Assembly: GCF_009834535.1 (NCBI RefSeq)
Contig: NC_045704.1
Span: forward strand, 21,266,001-21,330,000
Source: Camelus ferus
Taxonomy: Eukaryota
Reading direction: 5' to 3'
Length of the DNA: 64,000 nucleotides
The notes below the pieces were generated by a model. It had not been told where the DNA came from and searched no databases. It saw only the letters and a program-made list of their open reading frames with translations. This document shows, piece by piece, positions 14,420 through 48,110 of the stretch. The translations under genes were made by a program, and so were the position numbers. The stretch's first letter is position 1; each line of letters opens with the position of its first letter.

Positions 14420-18432
<4,013 letters not shown>

Positions 18433-22788: not shown

Positions 22789-22807
22789 GTACAGTCCAGA
22801 TATACGT

Positions 22808-22813: not shown

Positions 22814-22829
22814 TAGTTGCCATCAAAGG

Positions 22830-29620: not shown

Positions 29621-29761
29621 ATAGGTGTCCTTGTGAGGACAGTAGTTCTGAGGCGGTCAGACTCTAAGGTTTGGGGTCGGAAGGAAACAGGGTGTCCTGA
29701 CTTAACTCCCGGGTCCTGGGAGAGAGAGAAGACAGGCACAAGCATGTTTTTTGCCACGTTA

Positions 29762-29767
29762 TTTATT
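29762..29767 (-). terminator. Polyadenylation signal of the FCGBP-like locus
   Basis: AATAAA on the minus strand, followed by ggcaaaaaac and a TG/T-rich tract (tgcttgtgcctgtcttctctctc). Candidate last-exon acceptor CTTCCTACAG| at 29895. Confidence 0.6.
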
Positions 29768-30033
29768 AAAGCCATCTCCGTGCGTTCTCACCCCCGGGGC
29801 AGGTGTGCGTTGAGGGTCCCAACCCTGGGGACGCACAGAGGGACGATGTCAGGCGCTGAAGCGTTGGGTCATAGCCAGCACTACAAGCTCAGTGCTGTAG
29901 GAAGACGTCTGAGCATAGAGAGATGGTGTGGGCTGCAATCCCCTAAAGGCAGCCTGTAGCGCAGGGAGCTGGGCTGGTAGCGCCCTCTGCCGATGTGAGT
30001 CTGACCCGGGGGTAGGAGAGGGAGCTGCCTCAC

Positions 30034-30321
30034 CAGCTGTTGAAGCCCCAAGTTGAAGGGGCTGTTGAAGCCCCAAGTCCAGCATGCTTGGGACACGTCG
30101 ACTAGGCTGGCACCCCGGTGTCCTCCAGGGAGTATCAGGTCATCCGTCGCAATTCGTTGTAGTCCCCACAGGATACGCGGAGGCATCCTCGTAGCACTGG
30201 GGAGGCCCGCAAGGCCATGGCCCCCTTGGGCCCTACCAGCACCTGGAGCGTAGGGGACCTCGCTTAGCTTGCGACCACGCCTCCGCACACCTGGGCAGCG
30301 AGCTGCGTGGGGCGTCAGTTC
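30034..30321 (-). pseudogene. FCGBP-like exon: C-half of the terminal VWD
   Basis: N*RPTQLAAQV...S*...LQVLVGPKGAMALRASPVLRGCLRVSCGDYN then (after a 1-nt deletion) IATDDL...WTWGFNS. Compare FCGBP VNGLRVDLPAE...VQVWLGANGKVAVIVSNDHAGKLCGACGNFDGDQTNDW...WRAQDFSP. Stops at 30317-30315 and 30266-30264; donor GTGAGG at 30033. Confidence 0.82.
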
Positions 30322-30446
30322 CTTTGTGGAGAGTGGAGGCGGGTCAGGGGCTGGGATGAGGGCCGGAGTCCGGGAGTCAAAGGGGAACTCAGAAACCACT
30401 GTGAATCCCGCCCGCCCGTGTCTCTATCAGAAATGCATATTCGTCT

Positions 30447-30612
30447 GGGGGGAGGGTATAGCTCAGAGATCGAGCGCATGCATAGCATGCAGGACTTTCT
30501 GGGTTCAATCTCCAGTACCTCCATTAAAAAAAAAAAACACACCAAAAAACCAAAAAACATAAACCTAATTACCTCCTGCCCCCAAAGAAATAGATTTTTA
30601 AAAAATAAAAAT
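30447..30612 (+). mobile_element. tRNA-derived SINE (camelid vic-1-like) with 12-bp TSD
   Basis: GGGGAGGGTATAGCTCAG (A box) ... GGGTTCAATCTCCAGTACCTCC (B box), A-rich linker, AAACCTAATTACCTCC tail. TSD AAATGCATATTC at 30431-30442 and 30613-30624. Confidence 0.88.
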
Positions 30613-31857
30613 AAATGCATATTCAGGTCTTTGCTAGAGGAATAAGTTCTGAGATTTTCTTCAAAATCCTCCAACACAAACAAAACAAAAAGAGTGGGAG
30701 GAAAAGATGCCTTAAAGCAAGAATGGCAAAATATTTGTAACCATAATGGGGTTTCATAACACTCTTCTCTCTTCTTTTGTGACGCTTGAAATTTTCTATA
30801 ATGAACACTTTCTTAAAAGGAAGCTTGAGAGAGAAAAAAAGCCTCTAGAATCTGTCATATCTCTCTCACCTGTGTCTTCATAATCTAATAACCATTTACT
30901 GAGCACATACTCTGTTCCAGGCACTATTCCAAGGGCTTTATAAATATTTATCTTATAATGTGTAACACAGTATGTTAACATAATATGCAATATAATAGAA
31001 TGCAATTGATTTTTTAATATATTGTCACCTAATTTATATTTTATGTAATACATTTATTTTAAAATAGTGACTATTTAAGGTAGTTTATTAAACATTTAAT
31101 ATTTTAAGTGATATTAAATCCTCACCAACACTCTGACAATCTAGATCTGCAGCACCATATGCCTTCTGCCTCCTAGGAAACTAGGGCCAGAAAAGTAACA
31201 TAGCCTGCCTAGGTTTACATAGTTGTTAAGTGGCAGAGTCAGGTTTTTGAAACCTAGGGGTCTGACTTCATGACCTGTGTTTTTAGCCACTCTGCTATCT
31301 ATACTGCCTCTCCAAAAAATAATATAAAAGTGGCTGCTAGAGCTATCACAGCTTATACTTGTTGAGTACTTATGCCAAGCCTCTTACTTTATCTTCACAG
31401 CTACCCTATGCAGTGGGTAGTGTTATCACCACTTTTAGTGGATGAGGAAACAGGCATAGAGACTGAGTCACTTACCCAAAGTTACACTAGAATTCTAAGA
31501 AACATAGTCGGAGTCTCTTGACCCTCTAGCCAAAGGCTCTGGCTTAGCTTACCTGCTAGGTTGTGGCAGATACCCAAGCAGTTCTCTTGCTGGTCCATTC
31601 CCCCATTCCTACAAGTAGCCTTGAACTCACAGGTGATTCTATTTCTCATCATGGGATTTCAAGTTTGTTTTCCCCTTATAATTACTACCCATTTTGCCTG
31701 CCTGGATTCTAGTTCTTCTGTGGCTCTCCTGCTTCCGTGTTCCTTGGGGACCCAGGGATCTCTACCCTGGCATCTTTCCCTGCTGGGTTTCCAACCTCTC
31801 CTTGTCTGGCTTCTTCCCATTAGCACTTAAACATCCCCAAGTTTCTCCCATCTCAAT

Positions 31858-31911
<54 letters not shown>
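31858..31911 (+). repeat. (AAC)18 microsatellite
   Basis: Perfect trinucleotide run read directly from the sequence. Confidence 0.97.
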
Positions 31912-31915
<4 letters not shown>

Positions 31916-32647
31916 ATAAATCAGCTCTAAGATACTCTGCCTCTTCCTAGCTGATCTTTTTTCTCCCCTTTCTGCATAGACATCTTGTCAAGAGAGGGGT
32001 CTATGCCTGCTGTCTGTACTTGTCTCATTCCTCAGCCCTGCAGTCCAGGAGATGACCTCTTGATGTGATTTCTTAAATCACCAACAGCCTCCTTGGTCCT
32101 AACTCCACAGACATTTAGTGGGATATTTTATACTCATTTGTTGACTTTTACCGCAGCCCCAAGTGTAGCATCTCCCTTTTTCTGGCCTTGTCTTACAGTT
32201 CTCCTCCTTGCTCTCTTTCCCAGCTTAATGTCAGGTCTCAGCTCATTTGTCATCTCCTTCAGAAGGCCTTGACTGATCCCCTAAACTGGAGGTACTGCCT
32301 CTGGGTTCCCACAGCCTGCCTATTCAAGCCCTGATCACTCCAACATGTGCTGCCCTATTATAGCTCTGGTCACTCAGTCAGTAGTTTCCAGGAGTTCAGC
32401 AGCTCTCATGTCAAGGTGGGGTCAGCGGGTCCTGAGAAGTCCAGGGTGAGGTTTATGTGGGGTCTAGAGGGTCACGGGAGATCAGGGCAAGGACATTTAG
32501 TCAGTGGAGGTCAATGTGAGATCAGAGGATTATGGGAGAACAGTTCTACATGAAAAGGGTATGGAAGGTCAGTGAGGGGTTAAGAGGCCCCTGAGATCAG
32601 TGCTAGGTTACACAAAGGTCTTGGCTGGAATTGAGGTAGCCCTTTAC

Positions 32648-32909
32648 TCATATTTCCCAATTGGGTCCCACAGCTGCACAGCCATCTCTGAAGCTGATGA
32701 TCATTTGTGGTTGGGAGCAGTGCAGCCAGGACAGTCTGGGAAGTCAGAAATTACATGGAACCAGTCAGGATCTCGGGGCCTAGAACCCACCAATGTGGCT
32801 AGCTCACAGGCACAGGGTGTGATAGGCATGGGTGTGAGCCCACTGAAGCCATCAAAGGTGGTGAAGAGGCCCCCAGGTGCTAGATCGAAAAAGTGACAAT
32901 TGCTAGCCT
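32648..32909 (-). pseudogene. FCGBP-like exon: N-half of the terminal VWD
   Basis: LAPGGLFTTFDG...DWFHVISDFPDC; shifted frame QMIISFRDGCAAVGPNWEI*| (TGG to TGA at 32650-32648). Matches the recalled FCGBP last VWD LSVGANLTTFDG...PWYRVVAEVQIC...QVHIFFQDGMVTLTPNKGVW. Confidence 0.85.
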
Positions 32910-33169
32910 CTATAGAATTGGCCGCCTGGAGGCATCATGATGCCATTCTAAGTCTTCTGATGAGAAAATGATTCTTTTGATTGTTATTGATGCTTTATTG
33001 TTTGAGCCATGGCTATATAACCTACCCCATCCCCAAAGTGGGTTCACAGTTTTGAAGGCACTAGCCTGCTGTGAGTACCTTTTGCCCAGCAAAGTAATAG
33101 AGCTACCTCTTTTCTTCTAAGCTCCAAGACCCAGTCCCTGAGTTATTTGGCTCATCAGGGACAGGGGCG

Positions 33170-33316
33170 GAACTTTCGGCAACAACAACACTGTACATCC
33201 TCACCCAGGATGCAACCTATGGTTTGTGGGCAAGAAAAGGGCTGGCACTGAAGGCCTTGGCCATGTAAGCACATACAGCACTCTTGGCAGTCAGGCCGGA
33301 CCAATGCCTCCCCAAT
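33170..33316 (-). pseudogene. FCGBP-like exon: TILa/VWC-like cysteine module
   Basis: Acceptor TCTCTGCAG|; IGEALVRPDCQECCMCLHGQGLQCQPFSCPQTIGCILGEDVQC, compare recalled FCGBP SDCSERCSCSSSSGLTCQAAGCPPGRVC. The 3' end is approximate. Confidence 0.75.
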
Positions 33317-33329
33317 CTGCAGAGACAAA

Positions 33330-33610
33330 GACTCAATATCGGGTCCAAAAAGCCATCATAAACATGAATGGACAAACAATGAAGCACCTGTGTAGCACAT
33401 ATCACAGACAAAGGACTAATTTCCCTAAATATGTAAAGAGTTCCTAGAAATCAAAAACAAAAAGACCAACAACACAATATTTTTTCAATGGGCAAAGGCT
33501 ATTCAGAAAGTTAATAAAAAAGGAAATAGAAATGTTTCTTAGATATATGAAAAGATGCTCAACCTCCTAATAAGACATACAAATTAAAAATCTATTGAGA
33601 TATTTTGTGT
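33330..33610 (+). mobile_element. Old L1 (L1M) ORF2 3' fragment
   Basis: catatcacagacaaaggactaat...aaagagttcctagaaatcaa...aaatgggcaaagg...tatgaaaagatgctcaacctc. Confidence 0.75.
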
Positions 33611-34852
33611 GTCTATGCAGAACAGACAGCCCCAGCTGTAGGCTCGGAGGTAATGGCCACAAAAGAAGGACAGTGATTCCAGAATTCCGTCCAGCTACAG
33701 AGAGGGCATGGGGGGTGGGAGAACAGCCAGGGAAGGGAGTATTGGCAGTCAGCAGACATTCTTGGAACTGTCAATGAAGGATCAGAGAGAGATCAAGGAG
33801 AACATTCATTAGGGATCAAAAGAGAATTCAGTGGGAAGTCAATGGAGGCTAAATGGGGGGGTCACCAAAGGATCCAATGGGGGATCAATGATAGAGTGAC
33901 TGAATGGTCAGAATTAAAGAGAGGTCAATGGACAATCAATGAAGGTGGTAAAAAAAAGAATGATTAGGGAGTCAGTGGGAAAAGTCAGTGAGGAATCAAA
34001 GGGAGGATCAAGAAGAGGGCAAATGGAGAAAGTGAAATGAGTCACTGAAGATCAAGAGAAGGCTTTGGGTGGAACTAGGGGTGCTGCTCAACTGGAGGGT
34101 AAATGAGGGTGGAGTTAGAAGGTGAGTCGATGAATTAATGAGACACTATGAAAGGCTCAATGGATGAGATAATGAGTCAAAGAGGCTCAGCTGGGTAACA
34201 GAAAAGCCTGAGAATTCAATGGAGGAGTCAGTATCAACAGGAAGCTCAATAGCAAGATCTGCAGTGGTGTAAGTGGGGGCATTAATGGGCCAGTCATGGA
34301 TCACTGGGAGTGTCAATTAGATAGCTCAGCACGGATCAGTGGGGTAACAGTGTGGGGTGGGGTCAACAGGGCAGTAAATAGGGTTAATGGGTGAGTCAAT
34401 ATAACAGTAGTAGGATCAGTTGGGGAGGGGCAATGGGTTAATGGGATATTAAAAGGGGGGTGAAAGAGGGTCAATGGGGAGGTCAGGGCTGAGCCGGTGG
34501 GTTAAAGGGGAGTCAATCAGGGAGTCAATGGAAGACTCAATGGAGAGTTAATGGGAGGGTAGTAGGAGTCTCAAGGGTGGTTAAGCATGAACAAGTCAGA
34601 GTCAGTGGAAGGAGTCGACAAGCAAGTCAGTGAGAAGGAGGGTCAGTAACCACCAGTAAGGGATAAATAGGGCCACTAGGGAATTGGAGTGGACATATTT
34701 GAGAACCAGTGGGAGAGGCAGTAAAAGAGGCATCAACAGGAAAAGAAGGGTCACTATGGGTTATCTGAGAATAGTGGGGACAGTGAGGGATGGTGGGTCA
34801 GTGTGGGCCTTTGGAACCTCCCCTAGAAGTAGTTGAGATCTTTCAGACTCAC

Positions 34853-35400
34853 ATCTAGCCTCAGAGCATAGGCTGAGGGGGTCAGGTCCTTGGGCAGCCA
34901 CATGGCCACAGAAGTGGGGTCAAATTGAGGCTGAAGGGCTCAAAGTTGGCGTGGCCTGTGTCACAGAGACCTGCCAGGTGGTAGACGCAGGAACCAGGGA
35001 ATTCACAGTGGGTTCCTCCAAATGTGTGGAAGTGGAAGTCTCCAGTGGCAGTGCAGACCAGTGGCTCCTCCAGGGTGGTGGTGCTGGGTGGGGGCTGGGC
35101 TAACAGGTAGTGATGCCAGCCACCTGTGGCAGCCTTGCAGCGACCACAGCCCTTCTCAGGCCAGCAGCCGGTAGACTGCTCACCAGGGCCCCAGGGGCTG
35201 GGCAGTGGCAGTTCTGAATACAGTTGTCTGTCCAGAAAGTGCAGCATTGGCACAGGAAGCAGGAGCAGTGGCACGGAGCACACATCAACCCTCCAGCAGC
35301 GAAGAGCAGGCAGGCACTGGCAGGTAGGGGCACAGGGGTGGCTACAGTGCTCTGGGGCTGAGGGATTGGCACATGTGGCTGGATGTGCAGAGACACATGG
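34853..35400 (-). pseudogene. FCGBP-like exon: TIL + TILa + VWD N-half
   Basis: PATCANPSAPEHCSHPCAPTCQCLP (TIL); in another frame TFWTDNCIQNCHCPAPGALVS (TILa); CTATGDFHFHTFGGTHCEFPGSCVYHLAGLCDT (VWD start); donor GTGAGT at 34852. Confidence 0.9.
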
Positions 35401-35624
35401 GAAAAAGCAGGAGTTTGTCAGGCACTGGGGACTGGGGCCAAGGACCAATGATGGGGAACCAGCAGTGGGGCCACCGGGCTCAGGGCAGGGGCCAAGGTGG
35501 CTGAGGGGGAGAACAAGGGTCAGGGACCTATTAGTTGCAGGAGTCTGGGTCACCAGTCCCCTCCTTCCCAAGACCCAGAGGTCACGCCTCTATCTCTGAC
35601 GCCTCAGACCACAGCCCTGCTCAC

Positions 35625-36027
35625 CTTGCAGTAGAGCCTAGGAGTCCATCTGTGATGCCACAGACCTCCTCCGTAAGGCAGCTGAAGGGAACACAAGCCA
35701 GGCGCCCTCCAGGGCTGCACACTGGCACCAGCCGTCTGGCAGGCGGCCACATAGGCTTGCAGGCAGGCCACAGAGCACTTTGTGGTTCCTGAGGGCACAG
35801 CCCATGTTGACCACAGAGGTCTGGAAGAAGGGCTCCGGTGGCAGGCATGCGTGGCAGGGCGCCAGCAGGCCGCTGGGCTCACACGGAAGGCCACAGGTGC
35901 TGTGTCTGGGCTCTTGTCCTATGTGGCTGCTGGACAGCTGGCATCTGGGCAGGGATGCAGTGCAGGCCTAGGCCTCGGCTGCTGCAGGTTACCTGTCGAA
36001 GTCGCCACAGAGGCTGTGCACCCGCCC
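35625..36027 (-). pseudogene. FCGBP-like exon: VWD tail + C8
   Basis: GRVHSLCGDFDR*; CGLPCEPSGLLAPCHACLPPEPFFQT; after a frameshift CLQAYVAACQTAGASVQPWRAPGLC; donor AAG|GTGAGC at 35624. Confidence 0.9.
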
Positions 36028-37004
36028 CTGTCAGTGCAAGGACAGGCAGCCGAAGGTCAGTGGTGGGGGTCAGGGACTGGGGAGAATCAAGGAGAAGAGG
36101 GGTTGGCAGTGGTGTGGGGAGAGTGTGTGGAAGCTAAGAGAGGTGGTGTGCTGGAACACGGGGAGAGTGGAGAGGGAGGGGAAGAGGGAGAGGAGGGATG
36201 TGGGGGTGAAGTAAAGGGGGAGAGGGAGTCAAGGCAGAAGGGGCAATCACGGCAGCTCTTGGGAGTGGGTACTGAAGAGTAGGAAGAAGACCAGGAAAGG
36301 TGTGGGAGGAGGTGTGTGGAGGTTAGAAGAGGGGAAGGAAAATGAGGGGAGGCGAGTGGTGGGGTGGGCACGGGGGTGTAAGATAGAGGGAGTATTCCTA
36401 TTTGGGGACAAGGGAGAGACCTAGATGGCATCTGTGGACCTGGGGGATAAGGAGGCGGCAATGGAGGGCTGGAGAGCCAGGGAAGATGTTGGGACAGGAG
36501 GAGGGGAGAGGATGCGAGGCAGGAGGAAAGGCAGAGGTGAGAGAAGGGCACGCAGGGAAGGAAGGTGGTCAAGCAGGGACTGGGGTTGGGGATGCCAGGT
36601 GGGAGTTGGGGAAGAGGTAACGGTAATCATGGAGCATGGAGGGCACCCGGAGACCCAGGCAGAGGAAAAGAGACCTGGAGATGAAGATGCGGGGGGTGGG
36701 AGAGACAGGTGGGGTGGGCATACTGGGGTGAAGAGAAGTGGGGGAGGGAAGTGGGAGAAACAGAGAGCCTGGGCAGTATGGAGAAGGGACATGTGGACCC
36801 AGCTGTTGGGAGAGGGGCTGAAAGGAGAAAGGGAAGGAAGAGAGGGAGGAGGAGGTGGAGAACAGAGAAGGAAGAAGGAAAAGAGAGTGGAAATGAGGGT
36901 GATGGGGGGAGGAAGGCCTCAGTGGGGGGGTAGGCAGAGATTGGACCGCCAGAACAGAGACTGGATGGTAGCTGAAAGGAGGCAAAGAGGGGGTGGGATC
37001 TCAC

Positions 37005-37481
37005 CTTGACGCATCCCTGGTCCAGGAGGAAGCGGTGGAGCAGCACGTGGTGGAGTTCAGGCATCCATGAGCCGTTTTCCAGCACTACCTTGAAGGGCCA
37101 CGTACCCGAAGGCGACATTTCTCTGTGCCCACCAATGAATAGGTGCAGGCGTTGGGGAGGTGGAAGGTGGTGCCCTCGAAGTTGCGGTAATGGAGCCTGC
37201 CTGGGGCAAGGCAGAGATCAGGGCCATCCATCCTGCTTGGCACAGTTTGCAGGCCATCTGGCCGCCAGGTGGCAGTGGCAGCAGCGGCTGTGTGCGGAGT
37301 GAAGGGCGGGCAGCGGCGCCGGCGCAGCTCAGCACAAAGCCCGCTTCGCACACGCAGCCCTCGTAGCCCTGGAGGCAGCACCCGCGATCCTCGCAGCCGG
37401 GTGGCCGCTCCTGTCCTGCGAAAGTGTCTGGGCAGCTTGGAGCACACAGTGTGTAGTGTGAGTGTGTGCGGCAAAGCAAGC
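37005..37481 (-). pseudogene. FCGBP-like exon: TIL + TILa remnant + VWD N-half
   Basis: Phase-1 acceptor CTCGCAG|; LLCRTHSHYTLCAPSCP...EGCVCEAGFVLS (TIL); after frameshifts LCLAPGRLHYRNFEGTTFHLPNACTYSLVG and FKVVLENG; donor AAG|GTGAGA at 37004. Confidence 0.9.
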
Positions 37482-38049
37482 CTGCGAGGAGTAGGAATGG
37501 AGGGTTACTTGATGGCAAGTGGCTGCTGGAGTCTCACCCTCACCTCTGGGGCTGGGCTGCGACATCTGGGGCCTTGCAGGGGTAAGGGATGGAAAGATTG
37601 ACTTGGGCAGAGCTGAAGCTAACTTTGAAATGGGTAAAGACCAGGTAGCTAACCATGAATCAGAAGCACAGTTAATCCCTAAGGGTTTGGGATGGGTAAG
37701 GGTTTGGGGGCTGGACCATGAACAGGTCTGAGTTTCTGAAGAGGTAAGGGTTGAAGGGCTGGACCATAATCAGGGCTAAGAAGTAGGAAGGATAAGAGCC
37801 AGGGGAAGGACTTTCGTCTGAGATGGGTTGACACTTTTGGATGGGCAAAGTATGAGGTCCCCGACCATGACGGGGAGTGGAGAAGTGGTTGGAGGCTGGC
37901 ACTGTGGGAAGTATGGGTCTCAAGGACTAAATTGTGTGTGGCAGGTGGGGGGTGGGGAGGCTGGCACACTGAGATGGGCAACAAGGAGCTGAACTGGGGT
38001 CAGGAGTGGGTCAGAGAGGAGAGGCTGGACCGAGGCCCTGGACACTCAC

Positions 38050-38406
38050 TGCACAGGCTCAATTTCTGCCAGGGGAAGACCTGGCTGCCCAGCAGCTGGC
38101 AAGTTTCACGGTAGACAGTTAGCATCTAGCAGGGTACAGTGCCCAGGCATACATCCACCATGCAATCTTGGACATAGGGGTTTGGGGCAAGCAGTTTACA
38201 GCACAGTCAGAAGGGCCCCAGTGGGGCCAAGAGGATGTCACATATGTAGACAAAGTGGGCTGGGGTGCTGGTGTTTGGCAGGGTGACACAGGATGGTAGC
38301 AGTGGCAGCATCTTGCCAGCAGCATCCAGGTACCCAGCGCGGGAACCCACCAAGAAACTATGGCCGAAGGCCCAGGCCAATGCATCCTCAGGCAGCTTGG
38401 TGCCCC
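38050..38406 (-). pseudogene. FCGBP-like exon: VWD tail + C8
   Basis: AFGHSFLV...CDILLAPLGPF*LCCKLLAPNPYVQDCMVDVCLGTVPC*MLTVYRETCQLLGSQVFPWQKLSLC; in-frame stops at 38209-38207 and 38128-38126; phase-1 donor GTGAGT at 38049. Confidence 0.88.
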
Positions 38407-38916
38407 CTAGAGTGGAGGCTTTGCAGCCCCCAGCCCCAGCAATCCTCACCTCACATAGTAAAGTTTCTGTCTTCAGAAACCAGAAGTCCCTTCTCCAGAA
38501 CATAAAAGTCAAGCCATGGGACATGAAACCCTCACTGCAGACCCTGGAGTCTTCACTGCCTAGAGGACTTTTCCATCCACCAAATCTAGGAATCTTGCCT
38601 TTTAGAACTGCGTAATTCTGGACCCCAGAAACTATGTCTTCACTTTCAGGACCCACAGACTCCAACTCCAAGACCCAGGTGTTCCAGTCCTCAGAACCCA
38701 GAAGCCCCACCCCTAGGGTGGAGGAGTCTCCACCCTCAGACCCAAGAAGCCCTGGCTCCAGAGCCTCAGCAGTCCCATCCCTAAGGCCCGAGGCCATCCC
38801 ACCCCAGGGACTCTGAGCTTTGCCCCAGGAATCAACTCTAGTATCAAGGAATGTCCCCTCTAGTTTCCAGAGTCCCTTTCACCAGCAGCCCATAGCCCTT
38901 TACTTCTAAGGCTCAC

Positions 38917-39472
38917 TCAAGGCAACCAGCCTGGAATTTCCAGGGGTGGACGCTGATACTCAGGTGCTGACAAGCAGGCATATAGACCTGGAGGGCCACG
39001 CAAAGCCCAAGTTGGTAGTTGGGGAAGAGACAGATTGACAGGTCCAAGCACTGCAGCTGGACTCAAAGAGTGTAGGCTGCAGCAGATAATCGCAGTGGCC
39101 TGATGACCTGTTCAGAGTTCCTAGGACAGCACAGGGCCCTGGGGTCTCTGGTTGGGGTGCGGGCTGGGCACAGGAAGCATCCCAGAGGGTGTGGCATGGG
39201 GTAGCAGGTGGCTGCAGGGCCCAATTGCACAAGAAGACACGAGGCTTGGGACCTCCCACATCTTCGGGAGTTTCCCAGTTGAAGTTCCCGCACAGGCCTG
39301 CCATGTGTGCACGTTAGCTGCTGGTCATTTGCAGAGACCACATGTGCTGCCAGTTGGTGACGAGGCACAGTTCGGGTGGCTCTTGTTTCAGATTTGCCTC
39401 TGCTCATAATTTAGAGCTGTGAGGGTACAACCACAGCTGCCCATCACTCAGGGTCACTGGCTGCCACAGCCA
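38917..39472 (-). pseudogene. FCGBP-like exon: VWD C-half + C8
   Basis: QPVTLSDGQLWL...NWQHMWSLQMTSS*RAHMAGLCGNFN (TGA 39406-39404; TAA 39316-39314 sits where family members have the Tyr of PSSY), then after a frameshift LCVALQVYMPACQHLSISVHPWKFQAGC. Donor GTGAGC at 38916. Confidence 0.88.
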
Positions 39473-39869
39473 CTGCTGGGCAGGGCGACCCAAGAGCCAG
39501 AGTCACCAGAAAGGCTGTATTCCTAAGCATTTGAGGAGGGGTGAGGGTTGGAAGCTGAGGGAGTTGAATGTTGGGGTACTGAGTGAGTGGGGGCTTCAAG
39601 GTCTCATCCTCAGCCACTAACCAAGAGTCTTGTTTCCACACCCAGATGTGTCCTCACGCAAAACTCAAAAGTCTTTCTCTGAGGAATCCAGATAAGTTAT
39701 TTCCACTAAGGAGCTAGGACTGCCCACTTCCTCCAGTTCATAGGAAAGCCTTCAGCCAGAACTCAAATGTCTTTCCCACAATTACCAAGAGCCTCTGCTA
39801 AGAGCTTCCAAATCAGATGGTATCTCCCTTCTCTCAATCCATGATTTCCTTTGTTATCCTCTATCCCCC

Positions 39870-40580: not shown

Positions 40581-41364
40581 AATATTCCTCAATTAATGAG
40601 GGAACTCAGGAGTGTCAGGTCCCTGGGAGATGGGGGCCCATGTGGTGAGAGTAAAAATCTGGAGCCCTGAGAATTTGAGGATGCTGGAGACCTGGAATGG
40701 AGGCTGAAGAATGCTGAGGAACCACTAGAGCACTTGGGGGAAGTCCTGACTCCTGAGTGTCAGGGCAAGCTCTCAAGGGGTGTGGAGGGGAGTATGGACC
40801 ATCATGGGCTCCCACAGCAAGTCAGCATCATACACTTTCTGAGCTTTCCATGTATTCTCATTTTTGTCCTCAATACAACCCTATGGATTAGGTCTTTACA
40901 TCATTCTGATTTCACAGATGAAGAAACAGAGGCTCAGAGAGGTTAAATAATCTGCCCAAAGTCATACAAATAAATAGTCAAGTTGGGATTGCACCCATGC
41001 CATATGGGTCCAGAGTCTGTTGTCCTTCTATAGTGCTGAAAGGTGGCTTTGCTACATCCATAACCTCCATGAGTTTTCCCCCTCTAGCAACTCTGATTAA
41101 ATATAGTCTAGCCCCCACAACCTTCCATGCAGAGCACTGTCCCTAAATCTTCCCTGAGGAAAAATGTGGGACATACCCGTGGCTGCATATGGTCCGAGGA
41201 CATGACCAAAGCTCAGAGAATTTGGAGGCTCCAGATGCCAGTGTTAGGGGGCAATAAACATAGCAAACATCCTTCACATGACACTTACCATGAAATGGAC
41301 TCTGTTCCAAGTGCTTTTCATATATTAACTCATTCCCACCTTACAGCGACCTGACGAGGTGGGT

Positions 41365-41692
41365 GCTAGAGATCCATAATCCCTTAACTACAATCCCCCA
41401 ATGCAAAACTGGTCTGAAGACAGAAAGATGTTTTGTGTGTTTGATGTTAAAACTAAATTGGCAGCGAAAGCTGACCTGAACTTATGAGTGGCTGCTTACT
41501 GTCTTAACTTATTCCACTTGGTATGAATATTCAGACATGTCACTGCAGAGATATTAATATTTGTTATTTTTAACACCCACTAGGAGTATTATATAAAATA
41601 CGTGGCATTTGCATGATATGACCATTTGAAATTCCAAAATCTGAAATGCACTTGGCCCCAGTCATTTTAGATAATGGACTGTGGACCTGCAT
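41365..41692. mobile_element. TcMar-Tigger-type MITE
   Basis: Imperfect terminal inverted repeats (agatccataatccctta ... agataatggactgtggacctg) and a ttccaaaatctgaaa motif typical of MER2/Tigger ends. Confidence 0.6.
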
Positions 41693-41775
41693 AATTGCCT
41701 CCATTTCTGAGATGGCAAAACTGAGGGACAGAGAAGGATAGGGCTTCCCAGGATTCCATACAGTATGATTCTTAC

Positions 41776-42652
41776 CGGAACAAAGCAGAACTCATGTTTG
41801 ACTGTAGCGATGGTAATGCCAAAGATGTGCCTTGTGACAAAGCATGGGCTGTCTCCCTCCAGAGTAGGCAACACACAGTTGGAAGGCAGGGAGGCCACTG
41901 GGCAGGGTCTGAGGGTGCAGCCTCAAGGCATGGGGAAAGAGTAGCCATCAAAAGTGTAGATGTATGGTAACCCAGAGGCCCAAAAGTTACCCCTTGTGAT
42001 GGACCCCTGCCCATTACTAGAGACAGTTGCTATCTCTGATTTGCACAAGTATCATTTTGGACCCAAACACAGTTTCAAGTTCTGGTTTCTCCACTGCTAC
42101 AGCCTCTGAGCTTGGCTCAATCACTGGCACCCACCTTGAGCCCCAGCTTGGCCACTGAGGCAATTTCTGACCGAGACCAATACACTGTCTTGGATTTGGG
42201 CTCTGGTTCAGCTGAGCATGGGCAGGGAGATAGGTGCAGGTGCTGGTTCAACTACAGCTGCAGATTTAGGCCAGGGTTCATTCACAGCCCCTGTGCAAGC
42301 CCCAGATAAGCTGCAGCCACAGGTAAAAAAAAGCCCTGGTTCAGCTTCATGTATGCTCTCTGATCCTGGTCTGACCATTACCATGGTTTTAGCTCTGGAC
42401 GCTGTTTTGGAGTCCTTTAGAGATACTGTCTTGAAACTGGACATGGTCTTGGATCCAGATGTGTCCTGAGTGCTGTGTATACACTTCGCTTTGTGCTTCA
42501 CAAGGTGACTTGTGGTCCCATCAGAGCATGCATAGTCCTTACAGGAGAATGGAACTGGAGGGGCATCATCACGGAAGATTCTAGGCATCATTAGGGAAGA
42601 TTCTAGGAAGGAATGGGATTCCATGGGAGGGTCCACAGCCGTCTCAGAACAC
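41776..42652 (-). pseudogene. FCGBP-like exon 3: Pro/Glu/Ser-rich linker + N-half of VWD1
   Basis: Acceptor CTCATCTCCAG| at 42653 and donor CCG|GTAAG at 41775. Contains WASGLPYIYTFDGYSFPMP*GCT (VWD start consensus CxASGDPHYxTFDG..F.GxC) with TGA at 41925-41923, then PCFVTRHIFGITIAT. Confidence 0.8.
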
Positions 42653-43985
42653 CTGGAGATGAGAGGAGAGGATGCAACAGAACTGAATCCTGGCATTTAA
42701 TTTCATCCCTGACCTGCCTCCACACCCTAAGCATCCAGGGTCCCTGGCATTGAGGACTCAACATTCAGAAGCTAACAGGGTTCCCAATCTAAAATGAATT
42801 GGGGTCCGTATCAGCAGAAAGAGAAGGGTGGGGCTGAGGGACAATACAGAAATGATCAGCACAGCCTGGGTGTATAATAGGACTTTGATAAGCCAGTGAG
42901 AACAAGCTTCCTCTAAAGACAGCTATACCAATTATTTAAAAGTATCTGTGCTAGTAAGTCCAAACACATCTGTAAGTTGATTTTGGCCAGTGAAGACTTC
43001 CATCTTGTCATGTTAAGCAGCCTTAAGAAGTGTGTGTGTGTGTGTGTATGCATTCTTTGGGGGAGGGATTGGAAACATATATCCTCCCTAATTTCTAGGG
43101 AGAGGATTTATTTTTCATAATTGTTGGTGCGTGAAGTTAGCCATCTACAAAGTAAACTTGAAAGAAATTATTTGTTCTGTAGGATTTTGTATATTTTCCA
43201 TCAAGATGAAATACAGAGTTTTGGTGTGGATTAGAATGGGAGCTTAAGTATCAGCTCCTCAGGGTAGGGATGTTGTCTATGTTGTTCATTGCATTTCCAG
43301 TGCCTAGAACAGGCCTGGCCTGAGGGAAATATTTTTAAAACTTATTGAAAAATAATGGCAAATATTTACTGCATGCCAGACGCTGTTCTATTAACTCATC
43401 TTTTAAAAGGCAAGAAAACCTTATGATGTTGTTGGTATTATTACCCACACTTCACCGAGGAGAAACTAGAGGGTTCGAGAAGCGAAGTGACCTGCCCAGA
43501 AGCACACAGCTTATTGCAAGATTTTAAGCCTCTTGGCTCCAGAGTCCAGCTCTGAGCCATTATGAATAAATGACTTGAAGTATATATCTTCGTTTCTAAA
43601 ATACCCTAGCCTCTCTGAGTATTCCCTCACGCCTCTCTCATCTCCCCGGTCTCCTGCTGTTTTTCGGAACTGGAAGATATTGGATGGGAGCCCCCTGATT
43701 CCAGGGTTACGGGGAAATCCCGAGTGCCTTGGCACAATTCAGGACCATGGTCAGCGTCCAGTTACCATTTACACTGAGTCAGCGCGGAGCGCAGCGCTCA
43801 CTGTGGCGATGCGCCTCTTTGGAGCAGCCTGAGAGAATGTGGATCGCGGCTGCCACACTCTCCGTGTGTAGATTTGGGAAGTGATTTTGCGACTTCAACC
43901 TTCAACTGCTCCCTCTATAAAATGCGGATTTTATAAAAATCTGCCTCCACGGTGGCTACGAGGAATACATTACATAATGTACATG

Positions 43986-43990
<5 letters not shown>

Positions 43991-44018
<28 letters not shown>
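43991..44018 (+). repeat. (TA)14 microsatellite
   Basis: Read directly from the sequence. Confidence 0.95.
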
Positions 44019-44021
<3 letters not shown>

Positions 44022-44494
44022 TTAACTCATAAATCTGGACTATAAGTGTTTGTGAGGCAGTACAAAAAGCAAACAAAAGAAAAAGACGGTTAAACAACTT
44101 GTGTGCTGGAAGTAAGTGGACCAGGGTTCAAATCCTGACTCTGCTCCTTTCTAGCTTGGCAAAAGATTTGAGCTCCAGCCCTTCCCCTTCCTTTCTCCAG
44201 GAGAAAAAAAGGAGGGGAATTATTATAATATTATTATAGCGTCTACCCTAAAGGCTAGGAGGAAGGTTAAGCATTCAATATTAACTTTGTTATTTTATCT
44301 CTCCCTCCCCATTGTTCATATTTTACACTATAATAAAGAAAAAGAGCACGTGACCATCAGCAATAACTTCCCCTTGAGCCCAGTACCTGGTATAAAAATA
44401 ATGTGGCACACATTTAATAAATTATAGTTATTATTATTCATTCCATAAATGTTTACGGAGTGCTGGGCACTATCATGGGTGCTAGTGATTCAAT

Positions 44495-44654
44495 GGTGAA
44501 CAAAACACTTTTGTAAAAATCTGACCACTTGAAGCTATTTGGGGTGACAGAAATATTCTATAACTTGATCTAGGTGATGGTTACACGGGTGTGTATATAT
44601 ATGGGAATATTAATCAGGCAGGTTACTTTAAGATTGTGCAATTAACTGTGTATC
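44495..44654 (+). mobile_element. L1 3' end fragment
   Basis: ttggggtgacagaaatattctataacttgatctaggtgatggttacacgggtgt; inserted in an L2 and itself interrupted by the SINE at 44669. Confidence 0.65.
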
Positions 44655-44668
44655 TTAAGCCTTACTTT

Positions 44669-44829
44669 TTGTTGTTGATTTTAGTTTGTTTTTGTGGGGG
44701 AGGGAGGTAATTAGGTGTGTGTATGTATATATGTATGTATGTATGTATTTAATGGAGGTACTGGGAATTGAACCCAGGACCTCATGAATGCTAGGTACAC
44801 ACTCTACTACTGAGCTATACCCTCCCCCC
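44669..44829 (-). mobile_element. tRNA-derived SINE (camelid vic-1-like) with 14-bp TSD
   Basis: Same head, B box and CCTAATTACCTCC tail in reverse orientation, with an internal (TATG)n tract. TSD TTAAGCCTTACTTT at 44655-44668 and 44831-44844. Confidence 0.9.
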
Positions 44830-44859
44830 TTTAAGCCTTACTTTAAAAAAATTGCTCTC

Positions 44860-45310
44860 AAGGAACTAATGTGTAGCAGAGAGAGAAAATAAGTTAAGAA
44901 TAAAGAAAGTGACATGCTTTATGGGAAAAAAAGCAGGGAAGGGCTAAAGATTGTAGGGCTTGGAGAGTTGCTATTTTAAATTGGGTGGTCAGGTTGGCCT
45001 CAATAAGAAGATTCAATTGAGTAAACAATTGAAGGAGGTGAGGGAGTGACCCAAAAGTATATTATGGGGACAGCCAGTGCAAAGGCCCTGGAGCAGGGAG
45101 AAAAGAGTAAGGTGGCCAATGTGGCTGCAGTGAGGGAGGACAAGAGAGGAGATGAGATCAGAAAGGTAATGGGAGCAGGTCGTATGGGGCCTTACAAAAC
45201 ACTGTAAGGACTTTTGTTTTTTACTGGGAGTGAGGTGGAATGATTGCATGGGAGGGACGTGACTTGGCATTTTAAAACTGTCTCTTTGGCTGCTAGTTGA
45301 GCAATCGAGT
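44860..45310 (-). mobile_element. L2 fragment
   Basis: gccagtgcaaaggccctggagcagg...ggccaatgtggctgcag...aaggacttttgttttttactg...ttttaaaactgtctctttggctgct. Confidence 0.7.
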
Positions 45311-45354
45311 GTAGTGTTATGATTTTCGATCCTCATCCCCTGAAATCCCATTAC

Positions 45355-46671
45355 CTGCCCACCGCCTCTCTTGGGCCCCAGAGCTGGTCACCCGCTGCCG
45401 GGAACCCCGCGGCTTGGGTCCGGAAGCCAGCGCCGTGGGCGGTGCTGGAGCTGAACTACGCCCGCCGCGTCTCCTGGCTGCGCACGGCATCGCGCCAGCG
45501 CCTGGGCCCATAGGCCAACTCGGTAACTCGGTCGAGGCGAAGCTCTGAGCCAAGACGTGCTTTGGCCAGAATACTGCCCGGGATGAGGCTCAGGACCAGC
45601 AGGAATGAGACTCCAGTGCGAGCTGGGCAGCGGCTGCTGATTGGAGAAGCCTGGCAACGCCTCGAGCGCGAAGCTCAGTCTGAATGCGCCCACTGGGAGC
45701 ATGAGGGCAAAAAAAAAAAAAGGATTGTAGGTGACGCCCGCGCAGGCGGCGGCTGCAGCCAGGAAAGTATCTGCTGGCGGGCGGGGAAGCTCAGCACTAG
45801 CGGGCGCACCGGATCCACGTCCAAGCGCAGCAAGGCGCCAGGGCTCAGAGCCCGCGCTCTTTTCGGGGCTGCCCCCCGCGGCCAACAAGCGCAGGCCACC
45901 GGGACCGAGAACCGCCAAGTACACAAGGTCTCCGGGCCCGGGATCCAGGAGGCGCGAATGGAAGCACGGCGTAGACATGGCCCCAGCGACTCTGGGGCAG
46001 CAGCTGTTCGCACACGTGGCCACAGGCTTTGTCTCCGCTTGCCGGCAACTGTGATCGGCTAGGAGCGCGACGGGATGAGTGGCCATGACGTGGGTGCCCC
46101 ACACGTCTCCTGAGCTCTAACCCCCTCGGTGCCTGGAAGGGCTCGAGGTGTACGAGGAGGGGCCGGCGGGCAGCGTGCTCGGGGCCGTCCAGAGGGACCG
46201 GCACCGGAGTTCTGAGACGCAGGCACATGGGCCCAGCGCCGGGCACCACGGCAAACTCCTTGTGCCCGTCGTGGGGCTGCAGAGACGGCGTCACAACCCC
46301 GTAGAGAGGACCCAGCGGGCAGTGCGGAAGAGCCAGGGAGAATCTCAGGAGGCTCGCTCACCATCACAGTCACTCCCACCGACCGCCACGCGCTGCCCGC
46401 CGCCCGCCCCGAGCCCCGCAGCTCCACAGCGCGGGGCAGGCGCACGGACGCACTGGCGCTTGGCCGCAGGCTCAGCGCGCGCCGGAAGGGCGGCGCCCCC
46501 AGCGGGGGCGCTCTCACTAGCACTGCCCTTGCGGGGCGGAGTGGGGGCCCTTGGGCGGTGGCGACACGTACGGCCGGAAGTGGGGCTTCTCAGTGCTGGA
46601 TTTCTCTAAGAAAGCCGTGATGAAGTAATGGCCCTGGAAACTCATAAACGCAGCCATTGGGCTTGAGGGAT
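45355..46671 (-). pseudogene. FCGBP-like exon 2: IgGFc-binding N-terminal domain, frameshifted
   Basis: Acceptor TTCCCAG| at 46672 (in frame with exon 1) and donor GCAG|GTAATG at 45354. Segments across frames match recalled FCGBP: GHYFITAFLEK (GREEFLTAFLQN), LSLRPSASASVRLP (VTVRPGESVMVNIS), LGPLYGVVTP (LGTEYFVLTP), GHKEFAVVPGA (NVKEFAVVAGA), ACGHVCEQLLPQSRWGHVYAV (TCNHVVEQLLPTSAWGTHYVV), GVTYNPF (EVTYDPY). Confidence 0.92.
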
Positions 46672-46699
46672 CTGGGAATACGGAGGAAAGAGTCAGCAT

Positions 46700-46910
46700 A
46701 ATCCTGTGGATTTTGAGGCCAAATAAATCAGGTTTTAATTCTGACTGCCACTCCCCGGCCATTTGAACATGGGCAAGGTATTTAACTTATCTGGGCCTCA
46801 TTTGTAAGAGGAGTTCTTAGCTCACACTCCACAGGGCTAAAGGGAAGATTAGATGAGATAATATACGTAAAGGCCATGGAACAGTGTCTGGTATATAAAT
46901 ATCAGCTTAA
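46700..46910 (+). mobile_element. MIR in intron 1 of the FCGBP-like locus
   Basis: ggttttaattctgactgccact...catgggcaaggtatttaacttatctgggcctca...agattagatgagataatatacgtaaagg. Confidence 0.7.
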
Positions 46911-47170
46911 AATACAGTTGTTCCATTGGGCCACCGTCCCGGAAAGGCGTGACTGGCCCCCTTCCTACAAGTAGTTTGGCCAATCCCTCTCCACAGAGTC
47001 TGCCCAAATAGTCCCTTGTCCCAGCTGGCCAGGGCCCTGTCCCTAGAAGCTCCACTGTGGCCAATCCCAGAATTTGCCAGGCAGCCCCCCAACCCTAGCC
47101 AGCACAACCAGTCCCTGCTGCAGACCCAGACCAGATCACCAGCCTACTGGGTCTCCCATGGATCCCTCAC

Positions 47171-47225
47171 CCCGTAGGAAACTCAGGGCCCCTAGGCACA
47201 GCAGGGCCGGTGTGACGGCAGCCAT
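47171..47225 (-). pseudogene. FCGBP-like exon 1: signal peptide
   Basis: ccagccATGG Kozak context; MAAVTPALLCLGALSFLR + G then GTGAGG donor, i.e. 18 codons + phase 1. The recalled FCGBP leader (MGALWSWWILWAGATLLW-G) is also 18 residues + G. Confidence 0.8.
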
Positions 47226-47428
47226 GGCTGGAGAGAGAAGGGATGGATCCAGGCTAGTCAGTGCAGTCTCTCCCCCAAGTCTGCCCTCCAGCCCTCCTAC
47301 TGCAGGAGCAGAAGGGGACACAAGAGGAATTCCAGAGAAAGGCTTGGGCCTCAGAGCCAGGGGAAAAGGCAAGGTTGGGGGTCTCACTTGCCAGGAGCTG
47401 GACTAAGGCCAGGCATATCGTGGGGGCA

Positions 47429-47434
47429 TTTATA
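47429..47434 (-). promoter_or_regulatory. TATA box of the FCGBP-like locus
   Basis: GACTATAAATG on the minus strand about 200 nt upstream of the Kozak ATG at 47225. Confidence 0.5.
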
Positions 47435-47959: not shown

Positions 47960-48110
47960 GGTGCCAGGAGCCCACACTCCTGGATTCTGTGCAAGGAGGG
48001 ACTGGAGACTGGATTTCTGTGTCTGAGGGAGGAGAACTGGGGACCTAAACTCCTGAACCTGGGGAAGGAGGGAGCTGCAGCCTGGACCCTAGGCCCTGGA
48101 AGTGACTGGA
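47960..48110 (+). repeat. Degenerate MSR1-like ~37-bp minisatellite units
   Basis: gggaggagaactggggacctaaactcctgaacctgg and neighbouring units resemble the recalled MSR1 unit GGGAGGAGGGGCTGGGGGCCTGGACTCCTGGGTCTGA. Confidence 0.55.

What the first reader, a model, noticed from the sequence alone, without database searches (positions are those of the whole stretch)
29745..47434. A complete but decayed FCGBP paralogue hidden between SDHAF1 and LRFN3
Seen in sequence: about 12 minus-strand exon remnants in colinear order, namely TATA box, Kozak ATG, 18-codon signal exon, IgGFc-binding N-domain exon, linker, VWD-C8, VWD tail-C8, TIL-VWD, C8, TIL-TILa-VWD, TILa, terminal VWD in two exons, and polyA signal. 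No single ORF shows this because the motifs are split across frames by stops and indels. Established: the combination of an IgGFc-binding N-domain with a terminal VWD of the TTFDG...W(Y/F)RVV...FQDG...PN..W type defines FCGBP, a mucus protein that partners MUC2/TFF3; human FCGBP lies several Mb away on 19q13.2. Inference: this is an ancient, smaller (at least 5 VWD) non-adjacent FCGBP paralogue lost in this lineage. It could still be an intact, poorly described mucosal gene in other mammals.
Basis: partly seen in the sequence, partly recalled or inferred. Interest (0 to 1): 0.88.

Follow-up and report, generated by a model that had tools for sequence, protein, structure and literature searches.

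The report
Dead FCGBP-like mucus gene in camels
Between SDHAF1 and LRFN3 this camel genome carries the wreck of a second, uncharacterised FCGBP-like secreted mucus-type gene that still looks intact in dogs, mustelids, seals and a marsupial, and that was already broken in the common ancestor of camels and dolphins.

Summary
On the minus strand, from a TATAAAT at 47434 to an AATAAA at 29762, lie 11 colinear exon remnants of an FCGBP-family gene (Pfam IgGFc_binding, VWD, C8, TIL, TILa). The window is Camelus: it is 99.4-100% identical to C. ferus.

The remnants are orthologous to an automatically annotated "IgGFc-binding protein-like" gene of about 2,900 aa. That gene sits in the same LRFN3-SDHAF1 interval in Mustela nigripes, Canis aureus and the marsupial Sminthopsis. 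Canis versus Mustela shows no frameshift or premature stop in 14 exons, with dN/dS 0.35.

The camel copy has about 32-36 frameshifting indels, at least 11 in-frame stops, a 274-bp insertion and three deletions that remove five or more exons. Several lesions are shared base-for-base with the dolphin Sousa chinensis, including a 3.4-kb deletion junction and a 10-bp deletion. The gene therefore died before crown Artiodactyla diversified. A rhinoceros copy is also dead, with its own lesions.

The paralogue is distinct from canonical FCGBP: about 33% identity in the N-domain, no GDPH self-cleavage motifs, and a separate clade with 100/100 support. No paper describing it was found. One dog-saliva peptide matches it exactly.

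Verdict: an ordinary unitary pseudogene of an interesting, uncharacterised gene. The scan had not noted it elsewhere.

The parts
47428..47434 (-). TATAAAT box about 200 nt upstream of the ATG
   Evidence: Read. The same motif lies at the aligned position in Mustela and Canis.
47169..47225 (-). Exon 1: ATG plus 19-codon signal peptide, still open, followed by a GT donor
   Evidence: 15/19 residues identical to Mustela exon 1, with no lesion.
45393..46663 (-). Exon 2 remnant: IgGFc_binding (FCGBP_N) domain
   Evidence: Pfam IgGFc_binding 26.6 bits. 261/411 residues identical to the seal orthologue after correction. 10-11 frameshifts.
41776..42660 (-). Exon 3 remnant: linker plus start of the first VWD
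   Evidence: 153/274 identical to Mustela. 5-9 frameshifts and one stop at 41925.
38909..39484 (-). Exon 4 remnant: VWD tail plus C8
   Evidence: 103/189 identical. Stops at 39406 and 39316, an 8-bp insertion and a further frameshift.
38405..38436 (-). Junction of a 3.4-kb deletion that removed exon 5 and the 5' third of exon 6
   Evidence: Mustela L001 19397-22805 collapses to these 31 bp. The junction is the same in Sousa chinensis.
38048..38404 (-). Exon 6 remnant: VWD tail plus C8
   Evidence: 74% identical to the seal orthologue over 119 aa. Stops at 38209 and 38128.
37002..37479 (-). Exon 7 remnant: TIL plus start of a VWD
   Evidence: Pfam TIL. Four frameshifts including a 59-bp deletion.
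35670..36123 (-). Exon 8 remnant: VWD tail plus C8
   Evidence: Pfam C8. Three stops and three frameshifts. The 10-bp and 4-bp deletions are shared with Sousa.
35692..35700 (-). Junction of a roughly 1.7-kb camel-specific deletion removing the small exons for Mustela residues 1695-1797
   Evidence: Mustela L001 25758-27449 has no counterpart in the camel, but Sousa and Diceros keep it.
34820..35501 (-). Exon 9 remnant: TIL-TILa plus start of a VWD (GDFH, not GDPH)
   Evidence: Pfam VWD 27.1 bits. 150/225 identical. 4-5 frameshifts. TGA at orthologue codon 1873 is shared with Sousa, and there is a stop at 34825.
33609..33691 (-). Exon 10 stump (first 28 or so codons)
   Evidence: 68% identical over 28 aa. 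The exon breaks off at the same base as in Sousa.
33606..33609 (-). Junction of a 5.1-kb deletion removing the rest of exon 10 and exons 11-13
   Evidence: Mustela L001 29552-34652 and Canis L003 32368-37684 collapse to this point.
32645..33322 (-). Exon 14 remnant: TILa plus start of the terminal VWD, split by a 274-bp insertion (about 32910-33185)
   Evidence: Pfam TILa. 93/134 identical. The insertion is absent from Mustela, Canis and Diceros. A 1-bp deletion and a stop at 32650.
30019..30320 (-). Exon 15 remnant: end of the terminal VWD
   Evidence: 62/100 identical. Stops at 30317 and 30266, a 1-bp deletion and a 24-bp deletion.
29762..29767 (-). AATAAA polyadenylation signal, about 350 bp upstream of the SDHAF1 start codon (29413)
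   Evidence: Read.

Best explanation
This is a unitary, unprocessed pseudogene in a camel (genus Camelus). It is the decayed orthologue of a second mammalian FCGBP-family gene, here called the LS gene, which occupies the LRFN3-SDHAF1 interval.

Where it looks intact, in caniform carnivores and a dasyurid marsupial, the LS gene encodes a secreted protein of about 2,900-3,065 aa. The architecture is a signal peptide, an IgGFc_binding N-domain, a linker of about 200 aa, and 6-7 VWD-C8-TIL(-TILa) units. It has no GDPH self-cleavage motif.

In the camel no protein longer than about 67 aa can be made from the original start. Exon 2 is frameshifted at about codon 59. Every later retained exon carries frameshifts or stops. 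Three deletions removed exon 5, part of exon 6, the exons for residues 1695-1797, and exons 10 (part) to 13.

Shown: the lesions, the orthology and synteny, and lesions shared with a dolphin, so inactivation preceded the camelid/cetacean split.

Inferred: the LS gene arose by duplication of FCGBP in the mammalian stem lineage, and in species that keep it it works as a secreted mucosal or salivary protein. The camel remnant may still be transcribed as non-coding RNA in the reproductive tract.
For: Family: Pfam hits on stop-free pieces and colinear tblastn to LS proteins summing to 1,406 bits, against 321 bits for lion FCGBP.

Species: the window is 99.4-100% identical to Camelus ferus KB017008.

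Synteny: the order LRFN3 - LS gene - SDHAF1 (- SYNE4 - ALKBH6) is seen in Mustela nigripes, Canis aureus and Sminthopsis. The whole interval is colinear at the DNA level with the window.

Function elsewhere: the Mustela protein matches its own genome without lesions. Canis versus Mustela shows only 3n indels and no premature stop in 14 exons (a 2-nt gap at the exon-8 splice edge is treated as a boundary artefact), with dN/dS 0.35 over 2,730 codons. A published dog-saliva peptide matches Canis LS residue 820 exactly.

Decay: 32-36 frameshifting indels, at least 11 stops, a 274-bp insertion and three deletions. 1,876 of 2,897 codons are still alignable, at 60% identity.

The lesions are real: the independent C. 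ferus assembly has the same deletion breakpoints. Fourteen DNA (or probable DNA) runs from two organisms hold 94-100% of the 31-mers of 34800-39400.

Age: the camel and Sousa share the 3.4-kb deletion junction, a 10-bp deletion, a 4-bp deletion, a TGA and the exon-10 breakpoint.

Paralogy: window plus carnivores 100/100, plus marsupials 100/100. Window with canonical FCGBP is rejected at p-AU 1.5e-50. GDPH count is 0 against 5.
Against: Nothing contradicts the pseudogene call.

Open points:
- Two reproductive-tract RNA runs hold 57-65% of the sampled words of 34800-39400 and were not listed as holders of the upstream intergenic control. Some transcription, and therefore some non-coding role, is not excluded. 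Read-level evidence could not be obtained.
- Mustela-camel dN/dS is only 0.52, lower than a naive expectation for a very old pseudogene. The estimate uses only well-aligned codons and mixes a constrained carnivore branch.
- The sister relation of the LS clade to mammalian FCGBP has weak support (90/69).
- The taxonomic distribution of intact copies rests on word-limited protein searches.
- The saliva evidence is one low-scoring peptide.
Confidence: 0.93

Rival explanations
1. The gene is intact in camels, and the stops, frameshifts and missing exons are assembly or sequencing errors.
For: One neighbouring difference between assemblies exists: a 1-nt A insertion in SDHAF1 relative to C. ferus. 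So single-base errors or polymorphisms do occur in this region.
Against: There are more than 40 lesions, including three kilobase-scale deletions. The same breakpoints occur in the independent C. ferus assembly. 94-100% of the 31-mers are present in 14 DNA (or probable DNA) runs of two organisms. Several lesions are shared base-for-base with a dolphin.
Confidence: 0.01
2. It is a duplicated fragment or decayed copy of canonical FCGBP that landed here recently, not a separate ancient gene.
For: The domain vocabulary is the same as FCGBP's. From general knowledge, FCGBP lies on the same ancestral chromosome.
Against: The N-domain is 62% identical to the LS genes but only about 33% identical to canonical FCGBP. 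A clade with canonical FCGBP is rejected at p-AU 1.5e-50. Exon-intron structure, flanks and introns are colinear with the carnivore LS gene. A marsupial orthologue sits in the same interval.
Confidence: 0.02
3. The coding capacity is lost, but the locus survives as a transcribed non-coding RNA gene or regulatory element with a function in the camel reproductive tract.
For: The TATA box, ATG exon and splice donor are preserved. RNA runs X15 and X16 hold 0.65 and 0.57 of the words of 34800-39400, but were not listed among holders (down to 0.11) of intergenic 47700-51500.
Against: Coverage exceeds the exonic share of the stretch (about 53%), which points to unspliced or background RNA. Sibling runs of the same study hold 0.11-0.24 of the intergenic control, so host DNA or pervasive signal is present in that study. 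In the window-Mustela alignment, HSPs spanning exons are no more identical than intronic and flanking blocks, all about 67-79%. No read-level or splice evidence was obtained.
Confidence: 0.12
4. The loss is older than Artiodactyla: one inactivation in a common ancestor of artiodactyls and perissodactyls, with camel, dolphin and rhinoceros inheriting it.
For: The rhinoceros copy is also riddled with stops and frameshifts. A 1-bp deletion near codon 2762-2764 and a stop at codon 1273 coincide in camel and rhinoceros.
Against: The stop is TGA in the camel, TAG in the rhinoceros and an intact CAG in the dolphin. The 1-bp deletion lies in a C-run and aligns at different bases in different alignments. 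With about 40 lesions per species, one or two coincidences are expected by chance. None of the clear camel-dolphin lesions is in the rhinoceros.
Confidence: 0.15

Closest known systems
Automatically annotated 'IgGFc-binding protein-like' genes of caniform carnivores and marsupials. Examples: Mustela nigripes XP_059237595.1, Halichoerus grypus XP_035923990.1, Canis aureus (P0085), Sminthopsis crassicaudata (P0087).
   Same: They are true orthologues. They sit in the same LRFN3-SDHAF1 interval, on the same strand, with the same exon order. They are 60% identical in protein over 1,876 alignable codons and form a 100/100 clade.
   Different: Those are open reading frames under purifying selection (dN/dS 0.35). 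The camel copy has lost about a third of the coding sequence and is broken in every exon after the first.
Canonical FCGBP (IgGFc-binding protein, the goblet-cell mucus partner of MUC2)
   Same: Signal peptide, N-terminal IgGFc_binding domain, then repeated VWD-C8-TIL-TILa units ending in an atypical C-terminal VWD. Similar length to non-primate FCGBP: 3,000 aa with 7 VWD.
   Different: A different locus. About 33% identity in the N-domain. An extra linker of about 200 aa before the first VWD. No GDPH autocatalytic motif against five in 3,000-aa FCGBP. Much weaker VWD profile scores: 334 bits for 6 domains against 780 bits for 7.
Other multi-VWD proteins (zonadhesin, alpha-tectorin, gel-forming mucins)
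   Same: They share VWD-C8-TIL modules.
   Different: They lack the IgGFc_binding N-domain that the remnant and its orthologues carry. No MAM, NIDO, ZP or PTS domains were seen here.
Other unitary pseudogenes noted in this camel genome by the scan (e.g. HELZ2, s1-148976)
   Same: The same class of event: a single-copy gene dead at its ancestral position, with damage shared across camel genomes.
   Different: Here the parent gene itself is uncharacterised, and the loss is shared with cetaceans rather than independent.

Membership tests
FCGBP family (FCGBP_N plus multi-VWD secreted proteins) | N-terminal IgGFc_binding (FCGBP_N, PF17517) domain | tested here: met
   The piece 45848-46357 scores 26.6 bits, above the 25.6 cut-off. 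The corrected exon 2 is 63% identical to the seal domain, which itself scores 152.9 bits.
FCGBP family (FCGBP_N plus multi-VWD secreted proteins) | Repeated VWD-C8-TIL(-TILa) units following the N-domain | tested here: met
   VWD, C8, TIL and TILa hits lie in colinear order. Orthologues have 6-7 VWD, 5 C8, 6 TIL and 4 TILa.
FCGBP family (FCGBP_N plus multi-VWD secreted proteins) | Signal peptide (secreted protein) | tested here: inconclusive
   A 19-codon hydrophobic first exon is conserved with carnivores. No signal-peptide predictor was available.
Canonical FCGBP (orthologue of human and mouse FCGBP) | Groups with FCGBP orthologues in a tree and lies at the FCGBP locus | tested here: not met
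   A clade with lion and Rhynchocyon FCGBP is rejected at p-AU 1.5e-50. The locus is LRFN3-SDHAF1.
Canonical FCGBP (orthologue of human and mouse FCGBP) | GDPH autocatalytic cleavage motifs at the start of most VWD domains | tested here: not met
   No GDPH in seal, Mustela or dunnart LS proteins, against 5 in each 3,000-aa FCGBP. The camel exon 9 reads GDFH.
Unitary (unprocessed) pseudogene | No open reading frame: multiple disabling mutations | tested here: met
   32-36 frameshifting indels, at least 11 stops and three exon-removing deletions.
Unitary (unprocessed) pseudogene | Intron-exon structure retained at the ancestral syntenic position, with an apparently intact orthologue in other species | tested here: met
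   Introns and flanks are colinear with Mustela and Canis. Gene order is the same in three species. Canis and Mustela exons are intact, with dN/dS 0.35.
Unitary (unprocessed) pseudogene | No functional copy of the same gene elsewhere in the genome | not testable with these tools
   Only this 64-kb window of the camel genome was available. Protein searches returned no camelid LS protein other than the mis-predicted C. ferus EPY81234.1, which lies at this same locus.
Unitary (unprocessed) pseudogene | Lesions are real, not assembly artefacts | tested here: met
   An independent C. ferus assembly, 14 DNA (or probable DNA) runs, and lesions shared with Sousa.

The most novel reading that the evidence does not exclude
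The LRFN3-SDHAF1 gene is a previously uncharacterised second FCGBP of mammals. It would be a stem-mammal duplicate that lost all GDPH self-cleavage sites and acquired a linker. It survives as a secreted salivary or mucosal protein in caniform carnivores and marsupials. It has been lost repeatedly in other placentals: once before crown Artiodactyla, separately in rhinoceroses, and apparently in many other orders. The camel wreck may still be transcribed in the reproductive tract.
Probability: 0.6. Interest if true: 0.55.

Novelty: new member of a known kind. Interest (0 to 1): 0.45.

Why it matters
FCGBP is a major but poorly understood component of intestinal and airway mucus. Its covalent chemistry is attributed to GDPH autocleavage.

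This locus shows that mammals ancestrally had a second gene of the same architecture without any GDPH site. That gene is kept under purifying selection in dogs, mustelids, seals and a marsupial, and discarded in artiodactyls and rhinoceroses. It is a natural contrast for asking what the GDPH chemistry and the N-domain are for. Dog and ferret are the accessible models.

It also adds a clean, datable marker (the shared 3.4-kb and 10-bp deletions) for gene loss at the base of Artiodactyla.

Finally, it flags mis-annotations. The 'hypothetical proteins' in Camelus ferus (EPY81234.1) and Diceros bicornis (KAF5924289.1 and its neighbours) are read out of pseudogene debris.

For the camel itself the finding is an ordinary dead gene.

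Tried and rejected
- Read laying on 34000-39600 with four RNA runs failed on a filter at 36820-36856.
- SDHAF1 was sought next to the squamate FCGBP-like genes (Phrynosoma L004, Varanus L005) and not found within 10 kb. Their high scores came from tandem N-domains. A clade of LS plus squamates is rejected at p-AU 0.013, so I dropped the idea that the paralogue dates to the amniote ancestor.
- The camel-rhinoceros shared lesions (stop at codon 1273, 1-bp deletion near 2762-2764) were examined base by base. I judged them coincidental or ambiguous.
- Three word-indexed protein searches to widen the species list returned only caniforms, marsupials, a rhinoceros fragment and unnamed Logan fragments. 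The distribution in other orders stays open.
- A self-search of the 274-bp insertion in exon 14 found no other copy in the window, so its origin is unknown.
- The Rfam scan of the interval found only a tRNA-like SINE head.
- Literature searches for the paralogue, for FCGBP pseudogenes, and for FCGBP with LRFN3 or SDHAF1 found nothing specific.
- A rough date from dN/dS was not pursued, because the pairwise estimate mixes branches.

Full report
**What is there.** The window holds SDHAF1 (start codon at 29413, minus strand) and LRFN3 (coding exons about 53.8-58.5 kb, minus strand). Between them, minus-strand stop-free pieces hit Pfam as follows:
- IgGFc_binding: 45848-46357, 26.6 bits
- VWD: 34885-35589, 27.1 bits
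- C8: 35607-35918, 24.9 bits
- TIL: 37060-37533, 23.5 bits
- TILa: 33158-33355, 21.5 bits

The only meaningful PDB match is FCGBP, 8r0t.
- TATAAAT at 47434-47428
- a Kozak-type ATG at 47225
- a 19-codon signal exon ending at a GT donor
- AATAAA at 29767-29762

The TATA box, ATG and donor align with those of the carnivore gene.

**Whose genome, and what gene.** An exhaustive phmmer search with the 235-aa piece 34885-35589 returned walrus and ferret proteins. It also returned a Camelus ferus "hypothetical protein" that is 87-100% identical to window pieces. The C. ferus locus is 99.4-100% identical to the window, so the window is a Camelus genome.

The carnivore hits belong to clusters named "IgGFc-binding protein-like":
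- Halichoerus, 2,905 aa
- Mustela nigripes, 2,897 aa
- Odobenus, 2,641 aa
- Lutra, 2,451 aa

tblastn of these proteins against the window is colinear from residue 20 (46660) to residue 2889 (30061).

**Orthology.** The gene order is LRFN3 - this gene - SDHAF1 in three species, all on one strand as in the window:
- Mustela nigripes, followed by SYNE4 and ALKBH6
- Canis aureus
- the marsupial Sminthopsis crassicaudata (its upstream gene matches the window's LRFN3 exons)

The whole interval, introns and flanks included, is colinear with Mustela and Canis at 67-80% identity. I call the gene the LS gene.

**The LS gene looks functional where it is open.** The Mustela protein matches its own genome without frameshifts or stops. 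Canis versus Mustela shows only 3n indels and no premature stop across 14 exons. A 2-nt gap at the exon-8 splice edge is treated as a boundary artefact. dN/dS is 0.35 over 2,730 codons and below 1 in every exon.

Pfam gives IgGFc_binding, 6 VWD, 5 C8, 6 TIL and 4 TILa in the seal protein, and 7 VWD in the dunnart. That is the same plan and size as the 3,000-aa lion FCGBP.

A dog-saliva proteomics paper lists the peptide VAGLCGNFNRDPADDVDGPDPR for an "IgGFc-binding protein-like" entry (PMC6279226). It is a single low-scoring peptide, so it is a lead, not proof.

**The camel copy is dead.** I combined a frameshift-aware protein-to-DNA alignment with exon-by-exon DNA alignments.

| Exon | State in the camel |
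|---|---|
| 1 | intact |
| 2 | 10-11 frameshifts |
| 3 | 5-9 frameshifts, 1 stop |
| 4 | 2 stops, 1-2 frameshifts |
| 5 and first third of 6 | deleted (Mustela 19397-22805 collapses to window 38436-38405) |
| rest of 6 | 2 stops |
| 7 | 4 frameshifts, including a 59-bp deletion |
| 8 | 3 stops, 3 frameshifts |
| small exons for residues 1695-1797 | deleted (35692-35700) |
| 9 | 4-5 frameshifts, up to 2 stops |
| 10 | stump of about 28 codons |
| rest of 10, and 11-13 | deleted (33609-33606) |
| 14 | 274-bp insertion, 1-bp deletion, 1 stop |
| 15 | 2 stops, 1 frameshift |

In total 1,876 of 2,897 orthologous codons remain alignable, at 60% identity. From the original ATG the longest conceivable product is about 67 aa.

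These are not assembly errors. The same breakpoints are in the independent C. ferus assembly. Fourteen DNA (or probable DNA) runs from two organisms hold 94-100% of the 31-mers of 34800-39400.

**When it died.** The Sousa chinensis locus has SDHAF1 3.5 kb downstream. It shares these lesions with the camel:
- the 3.4-kb deletion, with the same junction sequence
- a 10-bp deletion at orthologue codon 1611
- a 4-bp deletion at codon 1691 and a TGA at codon 1873
- the point at which exon 10 breaks off

Camelids and cetaceans span the deepest split of living artiodactyls. From general knowledge that split is roughly 60 million years old. The gene was therefore already broken in their common ancestor. 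The camel's 1.7-kb and 5.1-kb deletions and the 274-bp insertion came later.

The black rhinoceros locus keeps all exons from exon 3 onwards (exons 1-2 lie outside the fetched stretch). It has about 40 lesions of its own. Only two coincide with camel lesions, and both are ambiguous. I therefore treat the rhinoceros loss as probably independent.

**Relation to FCGBP.** In an N-domain tree the camel remnant groups with the carnivore LS genes (100/100), and these group with the marsupial genes (100/100). The clade sits on a long branch, sister to mammalian FCGBP with weak support (90/69).

| Grouping tested | Result |
|---|---|
| window with canonical FCGBP | rejected, p-AU 1.5e-50 |
| LS with squamate FCGBP-like genes | rejected, p-AU 0.013 |

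The N-domain is 30-35% identical to canonical FCGBP. The LS proteins have no GDPH motif, where 3,000-aa FCGBPs have five. They also carry about 200 extra residues before the first VWD.

The most economical reading is a duplication of FCGBP in the mammalian stem, before the therian split, followed by fast divergence. This step is inference.

**Distribution and literature.** Protein searches found LS proteins only in caniforms (mustelids, pinnipeds, Canis) and marsupials. They also found pseudogene-derived fragments in camel, dolphin and rhinoceros. Felids, a pangolin and an elephant-shrew returned only canonical FCGBP. These searches are word-limited, so absence elsewhere is not shown.

The main evolutionary paper on FCGBP (PMC4948705) does not separate a second mammalian paralogue. 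No paper on this locus was found.

**Transcription.** Two "reproductive system" RNA runs hold 0.65 and 0.57 of the sampled words of 34800-39400. They are not among the listed holders, down to 0.11, of the intergenic control 47700-51500. Sibling runs of the same study do hold some of the control. The covered share also exceeds the exonic share of the stretch. This suggests transcription and no more. The one read-laying run failed.

**Verdict.** The camel locus is an ordinary, very old unitary pseudogene. The interest lies in its parent, an uncharacterised GDPH-free FCGBP paralogue retained in few mammalian lineages.

Noticed in passing
window about 29147 (SDHAF1, minus strand): Relative to Camelus ferus the window has one extra A (GGGAAACCCC against GGGAACCCC). 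This shifts the frame after about codon 89 and replaces the last 29 or so residues of SDHAF1, giving 95 aa instead of 118 aa. The LYR domain is untouched. It could be a species difference, a polymorphism or a homopolymer error.
   Followed up: partly
window about 35970-37000: A tract of about 1 kb that is strongly purine-rich on the plus strand (GC skew 0.45, AT skew 0.23) lies in the intron between pseudogene exons 7 and 8. It is only partly alignable to the carnivore intron.
   Followed up: no
window 32910-33185: A 274-bp insertion splits pseudogene exon 14. It is absent from Mustela, Canis and Diceros, has no other copy in the window, and its origin is unknown.
   Followed up: partly
window 44753-44824 (minus); also about 30400-30560: A tRNA-like sequence (Rfam tRNA, 42.3 bits) with a SINE-like continuation lies in pseudogene intron 2. 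A similar SINE-like stretch lies downstream of exon 15.
   Followed up: no
window 31854-31913: A (CAA)20 microsatellite in the intron between exons 14 and 15.
   Followed up: no
L008 (Camelus ferus) 10001-17720; L007 (Diceros bicornis) 1-18452: Annotated 'hypothetical proteins' are gene predictions threaded through pseudogene debris. They are EPY81234.1 (341 aa) in the camel, and KAF5924289.1 (1,019 aa) with two neighbours in the rhinoceros. They should be re-annotated as a pseudogene.
   Followed up: partly
L001 (Mustela nigripes) about 38730: A TGA at orthologue codon 2884 is conserved in Canis and Diceros and is read as a stop in Mustela's own exon 15. The last 13 residues of the Mustela model probably come from a mis-predicted extra splice.
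   Followed up: no
L003 (Canis aureus) 22202-26010: The Canis annotation splits the LS gene into a 2,170-aa model and a nested 495-aa VWD-C8-TIL model, although all 14 exons align intact to Mustela. The dog-family gene models are probably incomplete rather than the gene being shorter.
   Followed up: partly
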